From positions 1 to 64,000 of the IMG/VR virus record IMGVR_UViG_3300017991_000002: 64,000 bases of DNA; one strand, written 5' to 3'. Within the stretch, counting starts at the first letter, position 1. Each line of letters begins with the position of its first letter. Below the pieces are notes generated by a model that saw only the letters and a list, made by a program, of their open reading frames with translations, was not told the DNA's origin and did no database searches. The translations under genes were made by a program, and so were the position numbers. Shown here in pieces: positions 11,185 to 61,375 of the stretch.

Positions 11185-11660
11185 CAACAAAGTACCCACC
11201 TCATACCCCCTTTTACGTACCTTGATACGGTACTTGTTAGTATACAAGTTCCAACTTCTTTGTATACTGATAGGGTACTTCCCCTATATCAAGTTACATC
11301 TTCTTGAATATCGCACAAGAATGAAACCACACAGCAGACGATCAATCCTTCCCCAATTCAACATGTCGTACCCTCACATAGGACATACCCCCTATCAGTA
11401 CCCTATAAAGTACCCATACAGATACCCTACTTGTTAGTATACAAGTTCCAACTTCTTGGTATACTGATGGGGTACTTCCCCTATATCAAACACCAACTCG
11501 TCATTTTTTGAGGAAGATCCAGCCAAGATGACTCAAAATTCAACAACATAGTATACAGTATGGGTACTTCCTAGCATACAAGTGCTGACTTCCTGGTATA
11601 CAGATAGGGTACTTGTTGGTATACTGATAGGGTACTTCCCTTATATCAAGTTACATAAAT
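11185..11660. repeat. Iteron-like GGTACTT repeat region with a 62-bp direct repeat
   Basis: 11231-11292 and 11428-11489 match at 60/62; partial third copy at about 11609-11656; six GGTACTT plus inverted AGTACC copies. Confidence 0.85.
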
Positions 11661-11710
11661 AATAAATATCAGCACCATTCGTGTAAAAATTAGGGTTTAT
11701 TTTTCCCTTG

Positions 11711-11734
11711 CAAATACCCCTAAAGGGGTATTTG
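11711..11734. repeat. Perfect palindrome
   Basis: CAAATACCCCT-AA-AGGGGTATTTG (11-bp arms). Confidence 0.8.
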
Positions 11735-11752
11735 GGGAACAGGCGGTTGGAG

Positions 11753-11790
11753 ACAAAAAAAGCCCCCAAGGATTTCTCCCTGGGGGCCTA
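11753..11790 (-). terminator. Rho-independent terminator ending the early region
   Basis: Minus strand GCCCCCAGGG-AGAAA-TCCTTGGGGGC followed by T7. Confidence 0.8.
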
Positions 11791-11848
11791 GACCTTACGT
11801 TGGGTTGAACATGAAACCTACCGTTGGACTTATGCAACAATAGGGGAG

Positions 11849-11971
11849 TTATTCTTCTTGAATTCCTCGAGCAGCTTCATATTCAGCAAAAAGAATTCTT
11901 TCATTTTCTGCTGCTTCGAGTATCTCTCTTGCAATCTGTAATGCCTCAGCTCGTGATATAATAAGGGTCAT
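11849..11971 (-). CDS. Small acidic hypothetical protein (40 aa)
   Basis: Hand translation MTLIISRAEALQIAREILEAAENERILFAEYEAARGIQEE; starts 1 nt after the upstream stop. Confidence 0.6.
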   Translation of the reverse strand: MTLIISRAEALQIAREILEAAENERILFAEYEAARGIQEE

Positions 11972-11972
11972 A

Positions 11973-12176
11973 TTAAAAATCCATCAGGTCGATCGGATAG
12001 TTCTCCATCTCATATTTCTCGATAATGATAGCCAAGTGCTCGAGACGGTTCGCCTCATCAGTTCCCTCTTCGGGATCCAGATCAATAAGCGCCTCTATTT
12101 CTCTAAGGGCTTCTTCGTATTGCTCTTCTGTCTCTATCCTATCCATCTCTTCGGGCTCATAATGAATTCCTTCCAC
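11973..12176 (-). CDS. HigA antitoxin N-terminal-domain-only protein
   Basis: IETEEQYEEALREIEAL...EEGTDEANRLEHLAIIIEKYE..YPI resembles HigA N-terminal helices; no HTH. Confidence 0.65.
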   Translation of the reverse strand: MEGIHYEPEEMDRIETEEQYEEALREIEALIDLDPEEGTDEANRLEHLAIIIEKYEMENYPIDLMDF

Positions 12177-19517: not shown

Positions 19518-19952
19518 CTAGCCCTCCCCTCCCGACATCCTCAGTTTTCTGGGATTACGCTTAATTCCTTCCGGCACAGGTCTACCCTCCAACCATCCCG
19601 CCTCTTTTGCAACCTTCCTGGCCTTTTCCATATCTTCAAATACCACCATTTCCACCTTTACTACTGCCCTCCCATTACTCCTATAATCAAGGTCTGGAAA
19701 AATAACCTGCCTCACTCTCCAAGATTCAATACCGGGGCCTCTTACGTCAAAATTACAAGATCTTGGAGGGATCTCTGGCCTATTCCCATCCATGATCTCA
19801 TTTCCGTGATCATCATACAGCGTTATCCTCAGATCAGCCAAGCTGACCTCGACCGTCTCTATGACCGGAAGTGTCTCTGTCTTCAGGCAAGGCAGTCTGG
19901 CCGTATAAGCTAAAGACCCCTCAAAAACCCCGTTGATGGTGGTCGTTGTCAT
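19518..19952 (-). CDS. Hypothetical protein, tagged
   Basis: Ends PRKLRMSGGEG. Confidence 0.65.
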   Translation of the reverse strand: MTTTTINGVFEGSLAYTARLPCLKTETLPVIETVEVSLADLRITLYDDHGNEIMDGNRPEIPPRSCNFDVRGPGIESWRVRQVIFPDLDYRSNGRAVVKVEMVVFEDMEKARKVAKEAGWLEGRPVPEGIKRNPRKLRMSGGEG

Positions 19953-20935
19953 TCTCCAAGCCTCCGGGGGATGACGGCAGGTAGGCTTCGTCTTCCGGGG
20001 TCTACAACATTTGGAAGAACGGGGGAAGAGACCAAATCCTCTATTGAATAGTTCTTGACCTTGCTGATATATTTTATCGTTTTAACTGGGTACCATAACA
20101 ACTGCACCGTTCCCTTATCCCCATTTGAGCTGAGACGAACCCCATGGATATATACCAGCCCGTTTTCCTTGGCCTTTTTAGTTGGCTCATATCTCTTGTT
20201 TCCGTGAGTATCTTTCACGTTTTTCTGAAGACCTATATTGGTCAACAGCCTGTTTACACATCTGGATCGATGCCACGAAGACATCGATTCAAAGTGACGG
20301 AACCACAAACCAAAATCGGTCACATTAAGGGCAGTATTGTCAGGATAAGTCTCTGCCAGAGGGCCGTTTGAGGAAAAATAGTCGATATAGACGGTTTCGC
20401 CTGTCGACCGCTGAACCTCTCTGGCCACTGCCTGTTTTTCATCCGATGTAAGTTTTCTATCCCTAGAATACCTGGCAATTCTCATTTCATGTTTGAGAAT
20501 CTCATAGACTTCCTTTCTTCTGCGAGCAAATTCCTGCAGACTTTTGGGAGGCTTCTTCATCTCTGGGAGGGCATCGTGTTTGATTTTCTGCAACTCTTCC
20601 TCAGCATCAATCAGGTACTGCCGAACGGCCTTTCCCGTTTCCGTCTTCTCGAGCTGGGCAAAATGCTTCGCTTGATTGAGGGTGATAGTGTATTCTATTG
20701 CCTTTGAGCCACCACCCATGTTCTCACGTTTGATAATTTTATCAAATGTGAAAAAGTCTTTCCCTTCAACAAGTTCTAAATCTCTGATCCGATTTTTGAC
20801 CCAATTGGAAAACTCTTGTTTCGATCCCAATGCTTCCCACAATGATCGGGCATCAACTCCCAACTTTTCCTCATCGCCAAAGTTATAGTTCTTAACTTCA
20901 ACCTTCTGAAACTTCTGTAAACTCTCTTGTGTCAT
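19949..20935 (-). CDS. AntA/AntB-family antirepressor-like DNA-binding protein
   Basis: VDARSLWEALGSKQEFSNWVKNRI..EGKDF..EYTITLNQAKHFAQLEKTETGKAVRQYLI. Confidence 0.8.
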   Translation of the reverse strand: MTQESLQKFQKVEVKNYNFGDEEKLGVDARSLWEALGSKQEFSNWVKNRIRDLELVEGKDFFTFDKIIKRENMGGGSKAIEYTITLNQAKHFAQLEKTETGKAVRQYLIDAEEELQKIKHDALPEMKKPPKSLQEFARRRKEVYEILKHEMRIARYSRDRKLTSDEKQAVAREVQRSTGETVYIDYFSSNGPLAETYPDNTALNVTDFGLWFRHFESMSSWHRSRCVNRLLTNIGLQKNVKDTHGNKRYEPTKKAKENGLVYIHGVRLSSNGDKGTVQLLWYPVKTIKYISKVKNYSIEDLVSSPVLPNVVDPGRRSLPAVIPRRLGE

Positions 20936-26176: not shown

Positions 26177-26411
26177 CGGTCAGCAACTCTACATCGATCG
26201 GTCCTCCATACTCCCGAGAGAATAGAACAACGAGATTACTCAGTTCCCGATCCTCATACCTTCTTTGCTGCTGGAAGTGCTCTTCCTTTAAATCATCAAA
26301 TATCTCCTTCGAAATATTACCCAAGGCAAAGTCGAGTTGATAACCCAGAAAATCCATGCGCTCCCTCATTGTGTCTACAATTATTCGAAGCAAGGCATCA
26401 AATCCGTTCAT
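26112..26411 (-). CDS. Hypothetical protein
   Basis: Tiles in the operon. Confidence 0.6.
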   Translation of the reverse strand: MNGFDALLRIIVDTMRERMDFLGYQLDFALGNISKEIFDDLKEEHFQQQRRYEDRELSNLVVLFSREYGGPIDVELLTDVFGCEVDQVERIMLSSPSEV

Positions 26412-27520
26412 TATCCATCCTCCTTGAAACTTGTTACCATATTCACCTTAGAGTTCAAGGTCATGTTCTGTATTATATCATTCAGCTCCTGGCCCTTCCT
26501 AAGACGAAACAGTATTGACCCCACCGGGGTATCTTTAACTTTGAAAGCAAATTCCCTCTGATCTTTAATATCCTTTGTCGACAACCACAATCCTTCGACG
26601 TAGCCAAGCATTCTGTGATACGCCAACTCAAAAGGCAAAAAGAACTTCCTGTCCTCGGGAAAATAACTGAGATACTCCTCATGATCATTTCCCAGGATCA
26701 ACAAGATGATCCTCTTGGGGGACAGGGCATTCTCGCCCCGAAGATGAGCAACCGCCAAATATGATGGATTCTTTACTTTAAGTCTCCAGTCCATTCTCAA
26801 TTTTGGATCAGCGATTCGGCAAACGTATCCCTCGTCGAGAGCATGTAGATCATTCATACTCTTCAATGCCTCATCGAAGGAATTGAAGTAATACTTTCTC
26901 GGGTATTTGAATGCATAATCAAGCCGATTATATTCTTTCCAATCATACTCCCCGGATTCCCTGTCCCTTACCGCAAGAAGATAAATTTCCGTCTCAGTAT
27001 AAGGCTTTACTACCCGTGACTCAGGGGACACCAGTTCAAATATGTAGGTATAGTGCTCTTTTGCTTTCAAAGCGCAATTGAAAACCACATCCAATCCCTC
27101 TTTAATTGCCTCGGACACCAGCTCTGAGAAGGTCTTCTTGTTCAAGTGGGTCTCACCCTCCGCAAATGCCATTCTTCTCGTTGCCGCACACCACTTATCT
27201 CCGTCATGGTAGACATTAATCAAAGACCCGTCCAGCTTCTCCGTAACCTCTGCCCTGGTAATATCAAACTCATCAGTGTCCGGGTCCTCCCCATAATTCC
27301 AAAACCGATCGAAGCTCCGACAAAGGACACGATAGTCCGGCAAGGAAAGGATTAGTCCCCGACATTCCATCACCATGGGGTCAAATCGACAATGATGGGA
27401 GTCAATCATATGATAATTCAAAACAACTCGATCGTCGTATTTATTGATGACAATCCCAAATTTCTCCTCTAAGGACTCAAGGGAATTTTCTTTAAGGTAT
27501 TCCTGAACAAGCATTGTCAC
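26411..27520 (-). CDS. T4 Rnl1-like RNA ligase
   Basis: ECRGLIL, FDRFWNYGE, motif I EKLDGSLI, FELVSP, EGYV, KVKNPSYL. Confidence 0.88.
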   Translation of the reverse strand: MTMLVQEYLKENSLESLEEKFGIVINKYDDRVVLNYHMIDSHHCRFDPMVMECRGLILSLPDYRVLCRSFDRFWNYGEDPDTDEFDITRAEVTEKLDGSLINVYHDGDKWCAATRRMAFAEGETHLNKKTFSELVSEAIKEGLDVVFNCALKAKEHYTYIFELVSPESRVVKPYTETEIYLLAVRDRESGEYDWKEYNRLDYAFKYPRKYYFNSFDEALKSMNDLHALDEGYVCRIADPKLRMDWRLKVKNPSYLAVAHLRGENALSPKRIILLILGNDHEEYLSYFPEDRKFFLPFELAYHRMLGYVEGLWLSTKDIKDQREFAFKVKDTPVGSILFRLRKGQELNDIIQNMTLNSKVNMVTSFKEDG

Positions 27521-52679: not shown

Positions 52680-52849
52680 CTTTTCCTCCTTTGAAAAAAT
52701 TGCGGTATCATTACTAATGACCCCAATTGTGATGAAGCTATTTCTTCAGTACATATTGTGGTCATATTAATGTGACAGAAATCGGGCACTTACTTTGAAC
52801 CAATCACTCTGTTTTATTATAGTATTTACATCAGGAGTATTCAAGGTAA

Positions 52850-53570
52850 TCTGTTTCAACAAAAGACTCTTTTTCTTTTGTTGAGCTGCCTCCTAAGTGG
52901 TCTTAAAAACGTGATGGCGCTATTACTTATAGCGTCGCAGAGGTAAAATCTGTGGATAACTCCAGAAACCTCTTCAGTCATATGAAGTTAACACGACTTT
53001 AGTTTCATTAAATAAACGTAAAAAAATAAAAAATAATCAAAAATAACGTAAAAACCCCCTTTTTCGCCTTTAAACGGTTATTTTTTATTTTTTCGGGGGG
53101 TATTTATTATTTATAGGGTATTTTCAACTTGTTGGGTATCTGTATAGGTACTTGTTAGTATACAAGTTCCAACTTCTTGGTATACCGATGGGGTACTTGT
53201 CGGATCCCAATGCCTCTAAATCTTGGGTCCTCAGATTCGACTTGACCCCTATCAAGTTCCGACTTTAGGGTAACCTGATATGGTACTTGTATGGTATCTG
53301 TATAGGTACTTCCCCGGGTAGTGATATGGTACTTGTATGGGGGAGGTGTAGGTACTTGTCGGTACTTCGGTGACATGTATGGTTTTTCGGGTCAAAAAGT
53401 CATCAAGTTCCGACTTTATGGCATGGGCAGGTATGGGCAGGTGTGGGCAGGTTTGGTACTGCCTAATGTGTATCAAGTATCAACAAGTTGACATTTGTAT
53501 GGGTACTTGTTGGTATACTGACTAGGTACTTGTCAGGTAGTTGATGGGGTACTTGTCTGGGAGGGTGTGA
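52850..53570. repeat. Origin-like intergenic region at the strand switch
   Basis: About ten GGTACTT; 50-bp copy of the 11.4-kb repeat (53149-53198); AT-rich 16-bp inverted repeat (53021-53036/53078-53093); DnaA-box-like TGTGGATAA at 52951. Confidence 0.75.
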
Positions 53571-53782: not shown

Positions 53783-54511
53783 ATGAACAAACTCACTGAG
53801 AAGGAAGCGAAACAGATATTCAATCTCCTGCAGACTGACCTGTTTTACATGGCAGAGATAGCAAGACTGTTCAGGGTTTCGACGGAGATGATTCGTCAGA
53901 TTGCGGATGGTCTGGCTTGGAAATCGGTGACGGGAGGAGTGGTCACTAACCCCCACAAAAAATTGTATGAGGCTTTTGGGGAGTTTAAGACTTTGCAGGA
54001 GTGGTCGGAAGATCCGCGATTGACGACGACACGTTCCTCCTTCTTCCAATCTGTTAGGGACGGGTACAGGATTGAGATCTCTCTGGTAGGGATTGTCGAA
54101 TTCAAAGCGAGTAAGAGACTTCAGAAAATCAAACTCCTGAGACAGAAGGGATTTAAAGATAAGGATATTGCTGTCTCCCTGGAAACAGTCCCATCAGGTA
54201 TTTACAGAGCCGCCAACAATCATCAAACAGGGTCCGGCAGCAGGTCGATATTGAGGGAAGCCTTTGGAGAGAAGAAGACTGCAAGCCAATGGTCCAAGGA
54301 TCCCAGATGTAAGGTTAGCTACCTTTCCCTTAATAAGAGATTAAAAAATGGTTGGGGTTTGGAGGAAGCTTTACTAACCCCCCTTCCCGTAGGAGATCGA
54401 GTTCCAGTGGAGTTCCATTGCATGAGGCCTTTGGTGAGTCAAAGACTGCGGCTGAGTGGTCTAGGGATAGTAGATGCAGGGTTCCCTACTACACTTTATG
54501 CTCAAGACTGA
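53783..54511 (+). CDS. HTH plus homing-endonuclease-type DNA-binding repeat protein (N-part)
   Basis: N-terminal HTH (MAEIARLFRVSTEMIRQI); two EAFGE.KT..EWS.DPR..RL..GW..EEAL.TP repeats. Confidence 0.7.
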   Translation: MNKLTEKEAKQIFNLLQTDLFYMAEIARLFRVSTEMIRQIADGLAWKSVTGGVVTNPHKKLYEAFGEFKTLQEWSEDPRLTTTRSSFFQSVRDGYRIEISLVGIVEFKASKRLQKIKLLRQKGFKDKDIAVSLETVPSGIYRAANNHQTGSGSRSILREAFGEKKTASQWSKDPRCKVSYLSLNKRLKNGWGLEEALLTPLPVGDRVPVEFHCMRPLVSQRLRLSGLGIVDAGFPTTLYAQD

Positions 54512-54940: not shown

Positions 54941-55269
54941 ACTTCGATACAATTTTCATTATTTCCAGCCTGCTCTATGCAGCTGTGATAGTTATTGTCT
55001 TTTTGCTGGGCTATAAGACAGGCCAAAGAGACGAGAATCAGGACAGCAGGGAAGTGCTTACAATGCTCAGGTCAGTAGTGGATGCTGCAGAGGGAGATCT
55101 TCACGAATCCTGTGACCAGCTTCTGATGGATGCCAGGGTGTTGATTGCGGAGAGGGAAGGATCGATTACCAGTGATCCTCCTCGAATATGTACATCCCTT
55201 GGAAGATTTCTTATGTACCGGGGTGGTGAATGGATTGAATTACCCGGAAGGGAGGTGAGGTCAATTTGA
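54937..55269 (+). CDS. Membrane-anchored hypothetical protein
   Basis: N-terminal TM helix; GGAG RBS. Confidence 0.65.
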   Translation: MNFDTIFIISSLLYAAVIVIVFLLGYKTGQRDENQDSREVLTMLRSVVDAAEGDLHESCDQLLMDARVLIAEREGSITSDPPRICTSLGRFLMYRGGEWIELPGREVRSI

Positions 55270-55359
55270 AAGATGTTGTGATTTTCGGTATTATATGCGG
55301 GATACTCACAGTAGCCGTATTCCTGTGGGCCTACCCCTGGAGAAGAAAGGGAGACTAAG

Positions 55360-55878
55360 ATGAGTGGATGGGTTCCTTTAATTTTAACGGTTTCATTGGT
55401 GATTTTTCTGTTCATTATTGTTAGCATCGCTACCTCTTATTCCATCAGAAGGCATGAGTCTGTTCAGAAAGAGGTTATTCGAGCAATAAGGGCCAGAGAA
55501 AAGTATATCGATATCCTCGATCATGTATATGGCCAGGAAGAGTTTGATGACGAGGAAGTCATTTATCTTCTTCCCTGTAAGAGCAGAAACGGTAGTAATG
55601 GGTTTTTTGTGCGGGCAGTTGAGGGGAAGAGCCGTGATAAGGTAAATTATTTTCTTGGCCTCGGTAAGGAACATTGGATACCAATAAGCCGGGGTCTTTA
55701 TGAGGAGTTTAGGAGAGAGTCGGCAAAAAACTTTTACCTCTTCATTGATGGAAGGATGGACAGCCGTGAAAAAGAAATGCAAGATCTGTGGGAAAATGGT
55801 TCCACGAAACTACCTGGTGAGTCACCAGAGTTATCACAAGAAGAAACGTCAGACGGATCCACGCAGCAAGAAATCTAA
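55360..55878 (+). CDS. Membrane-anchored hypothetical protein
   Basis: N-terminal TM helix. Confidence 0.7.
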   Translation: MSGWVPLILTVSLVIFLFIIVSIATSYSIRRHESVQKEVIRAIRAREKYIDILDHVYGQEEFDDEEVIYLLPCKSRNGSNGFFVRAVEGKSRDKVNYFLGLGKEHWIPISRGLYEEFRRESAKNFYLFIDGRMDSREKEMQDLWENGSTKLPGESPELSQEETSDGSTQQEI

Positions 55879-55879
55879 C

Positions 55880-56545
55880 CCCAAGTCATCTTGATCACGA
55901 TTACTGGGAGTGCCTCTGACGAGGCCCCAGGGTCGGGGGGGAGATGACACTAACCCAAGACTGGCTATGCTGTAGAGTGCATCAGTTATGCTTCTGCGGA
56001 TCGGCCAGTCTGAAGGGCTACGCTGCTAAAGAGCCACGGGGTATGATTTGATTCCATCGGTCTTGTAAGAAGACTTAATGTCCAAGCTGTGGTGCTGATG
56101 TTCCACACCGGGTGACGGTGTCTCTAAGGACGATGATTGAGGGTCATATCCGACAAAGCAGTGAAGGGAGGTGTAGTATGCGTTCGGGCCTCGGCTGTCG
56201 GGGGTTGGCGATGGGAACAAGACCCAGACAGGTGGTAGTCGTCAGGTGAGCGGGACTTTTAGCCGATCCTGATCATTGCCCATTTGCTCATGACCAGGGA
56301 TCTTGTAATCCAGAACCAACAAAAACTGCCGGTCGAGATGAAAATAGGTTTGAAAACGATCTGGGTGCCAGTTCGAGGAGCCAGCTTAGACAGAAGGCCT
56401 CCGAACAAAAGACACGCGTATGCTAATCTTTTCCAGAGATAAGTGTATCCCGCTTGAGCATGCCGACATTTCGAACCGCCAAATCCGGACTATCTTTTTT
56501 GAGAATTTCTGATCCACACCAGCCCCGGGCACCATGCCCGGGGCC
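55880..56545 (+). ncRNA. Candidate large structured ncRNA
   Basis: About 650 nt without a convincing gene; many local hairpins plus long-range and crossing helices. Confidence 0.5.
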
Positions 56546-56570
56546 CTACGCGAAGGAAGAGAGGTATAGA

Positions 56571-56798
56571 ATGGCTCATACATACTGCAAGGTATGCGCA
56601 CTGCCTTACGATTCACTTATTGGCAGAGACTGTCCCCATTGTCGAGAGCGTACCCAAAGAAGACTTGACAAAGAGGATGAAGACCAAGCCTGGATTGAAG
56701 ATAGTTTAAACCTTCTACATCAAAAACTTGATCGGCTGCTGTCACTTGTAGATAAGGACGCAGGGCCAATCAAGAGGAAGGGGGAATTGTACTTATAA
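56571..56798 (+). CDS. Small Zn-ribbon protein
   Basis: MAHTYCKVC..DCPHC; RBS favours ATG 56571 over 56454. Confidence 0.65.
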   Translation: MAHTYCKVCALPYDSLIGRDCPHCRERTQRRLDKEDEDQAWIEDSLNLLHQKLDRLLSLVDKDAGPIKRKGELYL

Positions 56799-56811
56799 TG
56801 AACTCACACTT

Positions 56812-57180
56812 TTGGTGGACCATACGAAGGTGGTGGCACCTTCCGCACATGATGGCAATGACTTGTCGACCAGAGCACCCCAGGAAGTATTTATCATGCT
56901 CCTTATTGTATTTGCCCTGTTTGTAACTGCCGCGGCTGTGCACAATACTTGGGGTATGTGTGGTGATTTAACTGTGTGTATTAAGGATGGGGAGGTTACA
57001 GTTTTCGAGGGGATAAATTATTGGGATTTCTTTAACAGAAAAAACTGCCTAAGCATAAACACGGGCGAGTGGACAACTATCTATATCCCCTGGGAGGAGA
57101 TAGAAAGAGTTGAGTTTATGATAACGGAGTGGGATGATGAGGACTTTAAGAAATCACAGAGTAAAATTCCTGGGGAGTGA
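56812..57180 (+). CDS. Membrane/secreted hypothetical protein
   Basis: Hydrophobic segment MLLIVFALFVTAAAV. Confidence 0.55.
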   Translation: MVDHTKVVAPSAHDGNDLSTRAPQEVFIMLLIVFALFVTAAAVHNTWGMCGDLTVCIKDGEVTVFEGINYWDFFNRKNCLSINTGEWTTIYIPWEEIERVEFMITEWDDEDFKKSQSKIPGE

Positions 57181-58829: not shown

Positions 58830-61375
58830 TTGCCGGAAAACAAAGCGGAAATAAAGGATACATATCAACGATTCTTCGATTACATGAATGCCGGATATCC
58901 TCTTATCTGGATCCAGACACAGGAGGATGCCCGCGTCATTTCTGAAATATCCCGACATGATAAGGATGAGACGCAGTGGTATGTCTGGGATATTGCCGCC
59001 GGCTTTCGTCAGCTAATCGAGAATGCTCAGGCAGAGGAGATGGAAGACCCAACTGGTCCGATTAAGAAGATTGAATCCCTTCCTGATCGGTCGGTAGTGT
59101 TCTTAAAGGACTTTCATCTTTTCATCACCAACCCGACCGTCTTTCGAATGATGAAGAACCTGATCCCTGTATTGGAGACAACGGAGAAGCATTTAGTGGT
59201 TATTTCCCCCACCGACAAAATGCCGATAGAGATCGAGACGGACTTCGTAATATGGGATTTTCCACTTCCCGATAGGGACGAGCTCGTAAATGAGGCAAAG
59301 AAACTGGCGGAGGATAACGACCTCACAAACATCAATGAGGAGTATGCTGCCTCTGCCGCCGGAATGGGATTAAATCCGGCCAGGAACGCTTTCTCCTTGT
59401 CCTTGGTTACCAGGGGAGGTAAGCTCGATCGTGAGCTTATTGAGGAGCAGAAGAAGGACAACATTCGAAGAGTGGAAGGACTCGAGTGGTTTCCGGTCGT
59501 TGAGGAGAAGGAAGTCGGGGGACTCGACAATATGAAAGATTACTTCAAATCACGTTGTCGAGGATTTACCGATCCGAAGCTTCCACTGCCGAAGGGAGTT
59601 CTGCTTGTTGGTCTTCCCGGCGCCGGCAAGTCGTTGTCTGCCAAGATGGCGGCACATATTTTCCAGACACCGCTCATCAGGTTCGATCTTGGGTCTCTGA
59701 AGGGATCCCTGGTTGGTGAGACGGAGAGCAAGACTCGTAAGGCACTGCAAGTGATCGATGCAAACGCACCGTTGGTGGTGTGGGTGGATGAAAAGTCGAT
59801 CTTGTCCACCTTAAATCCCGTGAACTGCTGGGACACTGAAACAGGTAGTGCTGTCAGCTATCAGCAGCCAAGCCTTGGGAGGAATTCCTTGGAAGGTTCA
59901 GAGGTCAGAGCATACCGTCCAGAACGGACGATGAAGCTCGTAGGGTCCAAGAGGACTCGAAGCGCGGGACAGATAGTTGACTTTTTTGATTAACCTGCTA
60001 TAGTATTAGAAAAGGTTCTTCTAATATTGACTAAAGCAGGAGGTTTTGAAATGTGGTCCAAGAAGTATGATGAATGTGTAAAATGTGGTTCCTCTGAGAG
60101 AAAGCATGTAGGCAGGGGTCTATGTTCCCTTTGTTACTCAAGAGACTGGGGAAATAAAAATGCTGACAAGCTTCGGAAACAACGGCATGAATGGTACATA
60201 AGAAGTGGGGGGAAGAATAGAGCCAGAATATTAAGGGAAGAGCGTTATTATGCAGGTAAAAGGAATCACATTCTGGAGCGAGATGGTTATAAGTGCGTCA
60301 AGTGTGGAGAAGATAGGGTAAGTCAATTGATTGTGCATCATGGAGACGGGAGTGGCAGGGGATCTAAAGAGCACAATAATGAAGACGATAATCTTGTAAC
60401 TTGGTGCCGAAGTTGCCATGCGAGACATCATAGTCCTCATAGAGGTAGGATATACAAGCCAGCTGGGTGGTCAGCTTGTTATTCAGCATGTATTGAATGC
60501 GGAACTACGGAGAGGCCACACGGTAGTAAAGGTTTGTGTAAGACCTGCTATGCCCGTAAGCTAAGAGCTGGTAAGGGTTATATGTGGACAGGATGGTCTT
60601 TTCATTATGAACACTGTATAGACTGTGGGACCACAGAAGTGAAACATCATTCGAAGGGTCTATGCACACGTTGCTATGATAAAAAGCGGCGTGAGGAGGC
60701 CAGAATGAAACGTCAACTATCTGATGATATGATCCGAACTCATGCGAAAGTATGAGAGGTTAATCGGACTCGGATTGACCGTAACATATAAATCCTTGTA
60801 TTTAAAGGGTTTTGGAGATCGAAAAAGCATTGGGAGGAGTGATGTCTTCGTCCAGATCAGACGCTGGAACAACCAGTAATATGTTCTCGGCACTGCTGAC
60901 GTGGATGCAGGAGTCTACGAAACCGCACTTCATCGTGGCAACGTGCAATGAAATTAGTGAATTGCTCGAGATCTCACAAGGTGCCCTCCTCCGTCGGTTT
61001 GATGATATCTTCTTCGTCGATCTTCCCACCCAGAAAGAGCGGGAAGAGATTATCAAGATTATGAACGAGCGGTATGGGACGAAGATACCGGTTAAGATGG
61101 CAAACGATATGCCGAATTGGACAGGTGCCGAAATAGAGCGCTTTGCCAGGGACTTGCTCTTCTGCAATGCCAAGACAAAGGCTGAGATGGATGAGGTCAA
61201 GGACGGAATTCGGTTGATTTACAACCAAAACCAGAATATAATTGAAACACTAAGACGGTGGGCGAAGGTTAACGCTCGCCGAGCGAATGCGTATCTGCCA
61301 GAGGAAGATGCCAGCGCTTCTGATAAGAAGTCGAAACGATCCTTGAGGTATCCCTCACAAACAACCAATGTGTAA
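58830..61375 (+). CDS. Ycf46-like AAA+ ATPase, spliced: join(58830..59789,60815..61375), 506 aa
   Basis: Walker A GLPGAGKS; splicing restores Walker B WVD|EIEKA..SDAGT..LLTWMQE; RRFD; WTGAEIE. Confidence 0.88.
59977..60004 (+). promoter_or_regulatory. Intron-internal sigma70-like promoter
   Basis: TTGACT-16 nt-TATAGT with TG extension. Confidence 0.55.
60051..60755 (+). CDS. Intron-encoded HNH homing endonuclease with three Zn-finger-like repeats
   Basis: CVKCG..VHH.D..N..DNLVTWCRSCHARHH; three C..CG...H..KGLC..CY repeats; AGGAGG RBS before ATG 60051. Confidence 0.85.
   Translation: MWSKKYDECVKCGSSERKHVGRGLCSLCYSRDWGNKNADKLRKQRHEWYIRSGGKNRARILREERYYAGKRNHILERDGYKCVKCGEDRVSQLIVHHGDGSGRGSKEHNNEDDNLVTWCRSCHARHHSPHRGRIYKPAGWSACYSACIECGTTERPHGSKGLCKTCYARKLRAGKGYMWTGWSFHYEHCIDCGTTEVKHHSKGLCTRCYDKKRREEARMKRQLSDDMIRTHAKV

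What the first reader, a model, noticed from the sequence alone, without database searches (positions are those of the whole stretch)
55880..56545. Candidate large, pseudoknotted ncRNA of about 600 nt
Seen: no credible CDS. Local stems GACUGGC/GCCAGUC (55959/56004) and ACACCG/CGGUGU (56105/56116). Long-range helices GUUCGG-GCCU/AGGC-CCGAAC (56182/56395), CUGUC/GACAG and ACCCAGA/UCUGGGU (56222/56360). A crossing helix GAGCGGGA/UCCCGCUU (56248/56448). An 8-bp closing hairpin near 56523. Known: phages carry large ornate RNAs such as GOLLD and ROOL; I cannot match this to a named family. Inference: a new or divergent large RNA.
Basis: partly seen in the sequence, partly recalled or inferred. Interest (0 to 1): 0.65.

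Follow-up and report, generated by a model that had tools for sequence, protein, structure and literature searches.

The report
Orphan hairpin-rich noncoding phage region
A 692-base gene-free, GC-rich stretch in the early-gene block of a novel 205-kb sediment phage folds on one strand into a row of unusually stable hairpins, so it is probably a structured RNA, but the proposed long-range pseudoknot is no better than chance and no relatives exist to prove the fold.

Summary
The window is the first 64 kb of a 205,367-bp IMG/VR phage genome with terminal repeats, from a sediment metagenome. Positions 55879-56570 are non-coding: codon-usage scores are negative in all six frames, and no protein family or decayed paralogue matches. 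The stretch is 52.6% GC against 45.1% for the genome.

The + strand folds about 25 kcal/mol better than dinucleotide shuffles (z -3.9, 0 of 60). The - strand gives z -1.35, and twelve coding controls give +0.7 to -1.6.

The signal sits in local hairpins: 55885-55948, 55954-56017, 56039-56151, 56229-56286, 56419-56447 and 56522-56544. Helices of 8 bp or more are expected about 64 times by chance.

Rfam gives nothing. That includes ROOL, GOLLD and the group I and II intron models, although the same genome carries detectable group I introns.

The three neighbouring proteins tested (172, 75 and 122 aa) are singletons in billions of sequences, and no DNA homologue was found, so covariation cannot be tested. 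No RNA data exist.

Verdict: a probable orphan structured RNA segment of an early transcript. It is not shown to be a large ornate RNA.

The parts
55266..55294 (+). Sigma-70-like promoter (TTGAAA, 17-nt spacer, TATTAT; 10 of 12 matches) upstream of the 172-aa gene. It is the likely start of the transcript that runs into the non-coding stretch.
   Evidence: This is a consensus match only. No terminator-like site lies between it and 56522.
55360..55878 (+). Upstream gene, 172 aa, with an N-terminal hydrophobic helix. Orphan protein.
   Evidence: No Pfam or PHROG family. Only itself among 5.8 billion proteins. Positive codon score.
55879..56570 (+). The non-coding stretch itself: 692 nt, 52.6% GC.
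   Evidence: MFE z -3.94 on the + strand against -1.35 on the - strand. No Rfam hit.
55885..55948 (+). SL1: 64-nt extended hairpin with four stacked helices of 8, 4, 5 and 5 bp. It starts 7 nt after the upstream stop codon.
   Evidence: Pair probabilities 0.96-1.00. Together with SL2, z -4.31 on + and -2.8 on -.
55954..56017 (+). SL2: 64-nt extended hairpin (3, 9, 8 and 4 bp).
   Evidence: P 0.89-0.99. Its 64-nt window (-30.7 kcal/mol) is in the top 0.1% of the genome.
56039..56151 (+). D3: 113-nt irregular long hairpin, closed by a 10-bp helix with three G-U pairs.
   Evidence: P about 0.8. z -1.87 on + against -0.34 on -.
56165..56249 (+). Very strong Shine-Dalgarno site (AGGGAGGUG, 4-nt spacer) followed by an ATG at 56178 and a 23-codon ORF that ends at TGA 56247-56249. 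This is a possible micro-ORF or leader peptide.
   Evidence: SD duplex energy -12.3 kcal/mol, stronger than 90% of 257 confident genes of this genome. The codon score is poor. Translation is not shown.
56229..56286 (+). D4: 58-nt hairpin (5, 4, 6 and 3 bp, five G-U pairs).
   Evidence: P 0.93-0.99. z -2.6 on + against +0.22 on -.
56419..56447 (+). SL5: 29-nt hairpin (6 and 5 bp).
   Evidence: P 0.85-0.96. The 56410-56550 segment has z -3.38 on + against -0.8 on -.
56522..56544 (+). SL6: perfect 10-bp GC hairpin with a 3-nt loop and no U tract after it. It is a likely 3' boundary, processing or stabilising hairpin, 27 nt before the next start codon.
   Evidence: strongest of only seven such hairpins in 205 kb. 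The same palindrome occurs in 50 unrelated, high-GC viral contigs, so it is generic.
56542..56560 (+). 19-nt word identical to one in the distant relative G004 (32% terminase identity). In both phages it lies just upstream of a start codon and includes the ribosome-binding purine run.
   Evidence: It is unique in the own genome. Nothing around it aligns. Its meaning is unexplained.
56571..56798 (+). Downstream gene, 75 aa, a CxxC...CxxC zinc-ribbon-like orphan with its own ribosome-binding site.
   Evidence: Cys_rich_CPXG, E 8.8e-5, below the curated cut-off. SD -8.1 kcal/mol. Only itself among 1.84 billion representatives.

Best explanation
The stretch 55879-56570 is a non-coding, structured RNA segment read on the + strand as part of the phage's rightward (probably early) transcription unit.

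It is most likely transcribed from the promoter-like site at 55266-55294, through the 172-aa gene. It then folds into a series of independent extended hairpins: SL1, SL2, D3, D4, SL5 and the terminal GC hairpin SL6.

I infer that these hairpins act at the RNA level. They could be processing or nuclease-blocking structures that delimit and stabilise transcript segments, or that release a stable RNA. They could also set how much transcription and translation reaches the downstream zinc-ribbon gene. A short ORF with an exceptionally strong ribosome-binding site sits in the unstructured middle.

Shown: the absence of coding signal, the GC enrichment, the strand-specific excess stability, and the position and robustness of the hairpins.

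Inferred: transcription, the RNA's ends, and any function.
For: - Non-coding in all frames.
- No decayed paralogue or homing-endonuclease remnant.
- GC is 52.6% against 45.1% for the genome, whereas the other ORF-free gaps are 33-47% GC.
- MFE z is -3.94 (0 of 60 shuffles as stable). Twelve sense-strand coding windows of equal length give +0.73 to -1.64.
- The effect is strand-specific: the - strand gives z -1.35. Each hairpin domain is better on + (-4.31/-2.8, -1.87/-0.34, -2.6/+0.22, -3.38/-0.8). About 18 of 110 high-probability pairs are G-U (counted).
- The hairpins have pair probabilities of 0.8-1.0. SL2 and SL6 are in the top 0.1% of 64-nt windows genome-wide.
- All neighbouring genes are on the + strand, downstream of the strand switch near 53 kb. 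A promoter-like site lies upstream, and no terminator-like site lies before SL6.
- Two independent assemblies of the source reads agree base for base.
Against: - No homologue exists, so there is no evidence of conservation or covariation.
- No RNA run holds the sequence.
- Other intergenic gaps of this phage and of relative G004 also fold 2-4 sd better than shuffles. Excess hairpins are therefore a general property of these non-coding gaps.
- The central 270 nt show no excess structure.
- Local 200-nt z-scores inside the region are matched by some coding windows nearby.
- GC of 52.6% is within the range of some coding kilobases of this genome.
Confidence: 0.45

Rival explanations
1. Non-functional spacer. 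This would be the remains of one or more lost genes, or of a lost mobile element, in a fast-evolving orphan-gene region, with incidental hairpins and one terminator-like stem.
For: All flanking genes are singletons, so the region turns over fast. Nothing shows conservation. Other gaps reach similar z-scores. The middle third is unstructured. The gap length (692 nt) is close to that of the two 729-nt HNH endonuclease genes of this window.
Against: No residual similarity to any own protein, to HNH_3 or to Pfam families. No frame has a significant deficit of stops. The stability is + strand-specific, with many G-U pairs, which neutral decay does not predict. The rest of this genome is densely packed with ORFs.
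Confidence: 0.25
2. A single large, ornate, pseudoknotted RNA of about 600 nt with a global tertiary fold, analogous to GOLLD or ROOL.
For: Its length, GC enrichment and phage setting resemble those RNAs. The whole-region z is -3.94. There is a slight excess of helices of 9 bp or more (36 against 23.7 +/- 5.3).
Against: There is no ROOL or GOLLD model hit even at E<=10. The proposed long-range and crossing helices have P<0.7, conflict with high-probability local hairpins, and lie in the segment with z -0.7. Chance alone gives about 64 helices of 8 bp or more. This genome has no tRNA genes; by my recollection of the literature, ROOL and GOLLD are often found next to them.
Confidence: 0.12
3. 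The stretch carries one or more very small protein genes. The best candidate is the 23-codon ORF at 56178-56249. The flanking hairpins would be its regulatory leader and trailer.
For: The SD duplex energy is -12.3 kcal/mol with a 4-nt spacer before the ATG, stronger than 90% of confident genes. The ORF lies in the unstructured part.
Against: The codon usage is atypical (negative score). At 23 residues there are no detectable relatives. It accounts for 72 of the 692 nt only. A purine-rich SD-like word can occur in a structured RNA.
Confidence: 0.12
4. A self-splicing intron (group I or II), possibly one that has lost its endonuclease gene.
For: This phage is rich in introns. It has an Rfam-validated group I intron at genome position 171885-172165, a second weaker hit, and an HNH-bearing intron that splits the AAA ATPase gene 3 kb downstream. 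The Rfam model missed that last intron, so a missing hit is not proof.
Against: No RF00028, group II D5/D6 or D1-D4 hit at E<=10. None of the P, Q or R core words that the genome's own introns share exactly is present. There is no local similarity to the AAA intron. The flanks are two separate ORFs, the upstream one with its own stop and the downstream one with its own ribosome-binding site, and no known gene is interrupted.
Confidence: 0.03

Closest known systems
ROOL (RF03087) and GOLLD (RF02032), large ornate RNAs of phages and prophages
   Same: Several hundred nucleotides long, non-coding, carried by a phage, richer in GC and structure than the surroundings, and of unknown function.
   Different: The covariance models give no match. 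There are no adjacent tRNA genes. There is no support for a global multi-junction or pseudoknotted fold, and the structure signal is confined to serial local hairpins. No family of homologues exists.
Intercistronic RNase III processing hairpins of the phage T7 early transcript (comparison from established knowledge)
   Same: Irregular hairpins of 50-65 nt with internal loops, lying between cistrons of a phage early polycistronic transcript. They act on one strand only and have no U tract.
   Different: As I recall, T7 has one hairpin per junction. Here six domains are strung over 692 nt. No cleavage or RNase III dependence has been tested, and the host is unknown.
Group I introns of the same genome (RF00028 hit at genome 171885-172165; HNH-bearing intron in the AAA ATPase gene at window 59790-60814)
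   Same: Structured, GC-richer non-coding RNA inside the same phage. They show that the phage tolerates sizeable RNA elements.
   Different: The candidate lacks the P, Q and R core words, lacks a model hit, and does not interrupt a recognisable gene.

Membership tests
ROOL RNA (Rfam RF03087) | Match to the family covariance model (574 positions, gathering score 99.1 bits) | tested here: not met
   No match at E<=10 in the whole genome. No match in targeted cmscans of the region.
GOLLD RNA (Rfam RF02032) | Match to the family covariance model (416 positions, gathering score 150 bits) | tested here: not met
   No match at E<=10. None.
Group I intron | Conserved catalytic core (P3-P8, with the P/Q/R/S sequence elements) recognised by RF00028 | tested here: not met
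   RF00028 finds two other places in this genome but not this one at E<=10. The Q and R words shared exactly by the genome's own introns are absent from 55879-56570.
Group I intron | Interrupts a gene whose exons join into a continuous conserved reading frame | tested here: inconclusive
   The flanking ORFs are orphans, so a joined product cannot be compared with an uninterrupted homologue. The upstream ORF has its own stop and the downstream ORF its own ribosome-binding site.
Group II intron | Domain V/VI and D1-D4 motifs (Rfam models in the full Rfam scan; RF01998 tested by name) | tested here: not met
   No hit at E<=10.
Structured non-coding RNA (generic) | Thermodynamic stability beyond dinucleotide-shuffled controls, on one strand | tested here: met
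   z -3.94 on + against -1.35 on -. Coding controls give +0.73 to -1.64. Caveat: other gaps also score -2.4 to -3.9.
Structured non-coding RNA (generic) | Compensatory base changes across homologues | not testable with these tools
   No homologue was found in the phage records, IMG/VR, JGI metagenomes or GTDB genomes, nor through the three neighbouring proteins tested.
Structured non-coding RNA (generic) | Transcribed as a discrete RNA | not testable with these tools
   Only the source DNA run holds the sequence, and no RNA run does.

The most novel reading that the evidence does not exclude
The stretch encodes the founding member of a new class of large phage RNA. It would be a multi-hairpin RNA of about 650 nt, made early in infection by a deeply divergent jumbo phage. 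It would have a function of its own, for example as a decoy or scaffold against host defence or nucleases, rather than acting only as a spacer or processing signal.
Probability: 0.12. Interest if true: 0.7.

Novelty: new member of a known kind. Interest (0 to 1): 0.33.

Why it matters
Large structured RNAs of phages such as GOLLD and ROOL are rare, and their functions are still unknown. Another unrelated example, in a phage lineage with almost no sequenced relatives, would widen that class.

As it stands the case rests on one sequence. It is a reasonable target for RNA-seq or structure probing, but it is not yet a discovery.

The work also showed two practical points:
- Hand-picked long-range helices in a 700-nt sequence carry no weight without shuffled controls.
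- Coding windows alone are a misleading control, because the other intergenic gaps of the same genome fold almost as well.

Tried and rejected
- **Rfam.** The whole window at gathering thresholds gave nothing. Three targeted scans with relaxed filters at E<=10 gave only noise, such as snoRNA or lncRNA fragments and the GC hairpin.
- **Protein coding.** I checked stop maps, Pfam on all internal ORFs and a codon-usage model, all under the standard code; no other genetic code was applied. Rejected.
- **Decayed paralogue or homing endonuclease.** tblastn of every own ORF against the stretch and a six-frame HNH_3 search found nothing beyond chance.
- **Repeats, iterons, DGR-like or CRISPR-like copies.** None.
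- **tRNA or tmRNA.** None in the window or the genome.
- **Homologues through neighbouring proteins.** The 172-aa, 122-aa and 75-aa proteins are singletons. The AAA ATPase and the DNA polymerase found no close relative in IMG/VR.
- **Homologues through phage relatives.** A terminase search found 15 IMG/VR records and one 54-kb Logan contig. None holds similar DNA by BLAST or nhmmer. The one complete relative, G004, shares only core genes.
- **Exact-word scans** of IMG/VR, JGI metagenomes and GTDB genomes with SL1, SL2 and SL6 words and the 19-mer returned only the source contig, unrelated high-GC coding hits, or generic GC palindromes. A terminase scan of GTDB genomes found nothing.
- **Reads.** Only contigs of the source sample were available. 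They show no variants and there is no RNA.
- **Similarity to the AAA-gene intron.** None.
- **Not done.** I did not build a single-sequence covariance model, because no candidate target sequences remained to search.

Full report
**Context.** The window is bases 1-64000 of a 205,367-bp IMG/VR virus record with direct terminal repeats, rated complete. Only one public run, a sediment metagenome that is probably its source, holds the sequence, and no RNA run does. Genes run on the - strand up to about 52.7 kb and on the + strand from about 53.3 kb, and the cumulative GC skew turns there. The phage is deeply divergent. Its DNA polymerase is 26-29% identical to those of SPO1-like Bacillus phages. 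Its terminase has only a handful of relatives, the closest (68%, 57% and 53% identity) on fragments. The one complete relative, G004 (163,760 bp), shares only core replication and structural genes.

**The observation.** The stretch between the stop codon of a 172-aa orphan gene (55360-55878) and the start codon of a 75-aa zinc-ribbon-like orphan gene (56571-56798) is 692 nt long. It is non-coding:
- Stop codons are spread over all six frames.
- The six internal ORFs of 40-76 aa match no Pfam family at E<=1.
- A codon-usage log-odds model trained on 62 long ORFs of this genome is negative in every frame from 55800 to 56550. The neighbouring genes score +8 to +17 bits per 150 nt.
- No own protein, including the two HNH endonucleases, leaves a detectable remnant there.

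The stretch is 52.6% GC in a 45.1% GC genome. The other ORF-free gaps of the genome are 33-47% GC.

**Is the structure more than chance?** For the whole stretch, yes.
- The + strand MFE is -254 kcal/mol against -228.6 +/- 6.5 for 60 dinucleotide shuffles (z -3.94, none as low).
- Twelve sense-strand coding windows of the same length give z +0.73 to -1.64.
- The effect is strand-specific. The - strand gives z -1.35. Each structured sub-domain is better on the + strand: 55880-56020 gives -4.31 against -2.8, 56035-56155 gives -1.87 against -0.34, 56225-56290 gives -2.6 against +0.22, and 56410-56550 gives -3.38 against -0.8.
- This fits the roughly 18 G-U pairs among 110 high-probability pairs. 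It argues for an RNA, or single-strand, feature rather than DNA palindromes.

Two cautions apply. First, other ORF-free gaps of this phage (11438-12035, 52695-53154) and of G004 also fold 2-4 sd better than shuffles, though on both strands and at low GC. Second, 200-nt windows inside the region are only modestly unusual, and some coding windows nearby match them.

**Which structure?** Base-pair probabilities single out six local domains:
- SL1, 55885-55948
- SL2, 55954-56017
- D3, 56039-56151
- D4, 56229-56286
- SL5, 56419-56447
- SL6, 56522-56544, a perfect 10-bp GC stem

SL6 is the strongest of only seven such hairpins in the genome, and it has no U tract. SL2 and SL6 are in the top 0.1% of 64-nt windows genome-wide.

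The pseudoknot's 5' arm lies inside D4. The segment that holds them (56150-56420) folds no better than shuffles (z -0.71). Uninterrupted helices of 8 bp or more number 80, against 64 +/- 9.5 in shuffles, so naming a few of them is not evidence. The anatomy is a string of extended hairpins around an unstructured centre, not a demonstrated ornate fold.

**Known families.**
- Rfam release 15 gives nothing at gathering thresholds in the window, and only noise at E<=10 in three targeted scans.
- The ROOL and GOLLD models give nothing in the whole genome.
- The group I model finds two places elsewhere in this genome: 171885-172165 at 64 bits with a classical P, Q, R, S core, and 170228-170433 at 30 bits. 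It does not find the candidate.
- That model also misses a clear group I intron 3 kb downstream, so I searched for the Q and R core words that the genome's introns share exactly. They occur only at those introns, not in the candidate. The candidate also has no local similarity to the nearby intron.

I therefore reject the intron reading, short of an RT-PCR test.

**Homologues.** I found none.
- The three neighbouring proteins tested are singletons in 5.8 billion proteins (172 aa and 122 aa) and in 1.84 billion representatives (75 aa).
- blastn against 50,697 phage records is empty.
- Fifteen IMG/VR relatives found through the terminase, the whole of G004, a 54-kb Logan relative and 50 loci sharing the SL6 palindrome show no similarity by BLAST or nhmmer.
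- Exact-word scans of IMG/VR, JGI metagenomes and GTDB genomes found nothing relevant.
- Contigs of the source run confirm the sequence base for base but show no variants.

Covariation, the decisive test, therefore cannot be run with the data available.

**Mechanism.** What follows is inference.
- A good sigma-70-like promoter sits at 55266-55294. No terminator-like site follows before SL6.
- The stretch is therefore most likely transcribed with the 172-aa gene, as part of the rightward early unit.
- The serial, irregular 60-110-nt hairpins without U tracts resemble intercistronic processing or nuclease-blocking structures of phage early transcripts (T7 RNase III sites, from general knowledge).
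- They could delimit a stable RNA running from about 55885 to 56544.
- SL6 ends 27 nt before the next start codon, so it may also tune read-through and translation of the zinc-ribbon gene.
- In the unstructured centre, an SD site of -12.3 kcal/mol precedes a 23-codon ORF (56178-56249). That is stronger than 90% of this genome's confident genes. The ORF may be a leader or micro-peptide, though its codon usage is poor.

My estimates:
- Structured RNA segment of the early transcript: 0.45.
- Non-functional remnant: 0.25.
- True large ornate RNA: 0.12.
- Mainly a micro-ORF locus: 0.12.
- Intron: 0.03.

**Verdict.** This is a genuine, unusual, GC-rich, hairpin-rich non-coding stretch in an orphan phage, and it is worth an RNA-seq or probing experiment. 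The specific claim of a 600-nt pseudoknotted RNA rests on helices that chance explains. Without homologues or expression data, the finding is a candidate, not a discovery.

Noticed in passing
window 58830-61375 (intron about 59790-60814; HNH ORF 60027-60755): The AAA+ ATPase gene is split exactly inside its Walker B motif...VVWVD | EIEKALGG... An intervening sequence of about 1,025 nt follows a U and ends in G. It carries an HNH endonuclease ORF. It also holds the same Q word (ATCAGCAGCCAAG at 59860) and nearly the same R word (59895) as the genome's Rfam-validated group I intron. It is a group I intron that Rfam RF00028 fails to report even at E<=10.
   Followed up: partly
genome G000:C1:171885-172165 (- strand) and 170228-170433 (- strand), outside the window; loci L041 and L042: A bona fide ORF-less group I intron (64.2 bits, above the cut-off) and a second weaker hit (29.6 bits) lie in the structural-gene block near the head maturation protease. 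The phage is unusually rich in introns.
   Followed up: partly
genome G000:C1, about 76560-76870 (+ strand), outside the window: P-like and R-like group I core words (1-2 mismatches) lie 300 nt apart. This could be a further intron.
   Followed up: no
window 56542-56560 and G004:C1:114797-114815 (L023 1501-1519): A 19-nt exact identity (GGCCCTACGCGAAGGAAGA) links two phages whose terminases are only 32% identical. In both it lies directly upstream of a start codon. In G004 it is about 25 nt downstream of a TTGACA, 17-nt spacer, TATTCT promoter. Nothing else around it aligns, and the downstream proteins are unrelated. It could be a shared translation-initiation or regulator-binding site. Two further metagenome hits are unrelated high-GC coding sequences.
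   Followed up: partly
window 11438-12035: This is a second long ORF-free gap, about 600-880 nt at 40% GC. It folds better than shuffles on both strands (z -3.3 and -3.9). It has no Rfam hit and no tRNA, and its nature is unknown.
   Followed up: partly
window 52695-53154: This AT-rich (33% GC) ORF-free gap lies at the strand switch and the cumulative GC-skew minimum, with z -3.5 and -2.5. It is probably a divergent promoter region, an origin, or both.
   Followed up: no
window 53783-54511: A second, free-standing HNH endonuclease gene of 242 aa, the same length as the intron-borne one, lies 1.4 kb upstream of the candidate.
   Followed up: no
window 56798-56865: A 159-nt, low-depth contig of the source run is 88% identical to the start of the 122-aa gene but has a different upstream sequence. 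A related phage with a different gene order is therefore present in the same sample.
   Followed up: no
window 26411-27520 (- strand) and 19949-20935 (- strand): An RNA ligase of the T4 Rnl/tail-fibre-attachment type and an Ant-like anti-repressor are encoded in the leftward block. The genome carries no tRNA genes, whereas relative G004 carries 12.
   Followed up: no
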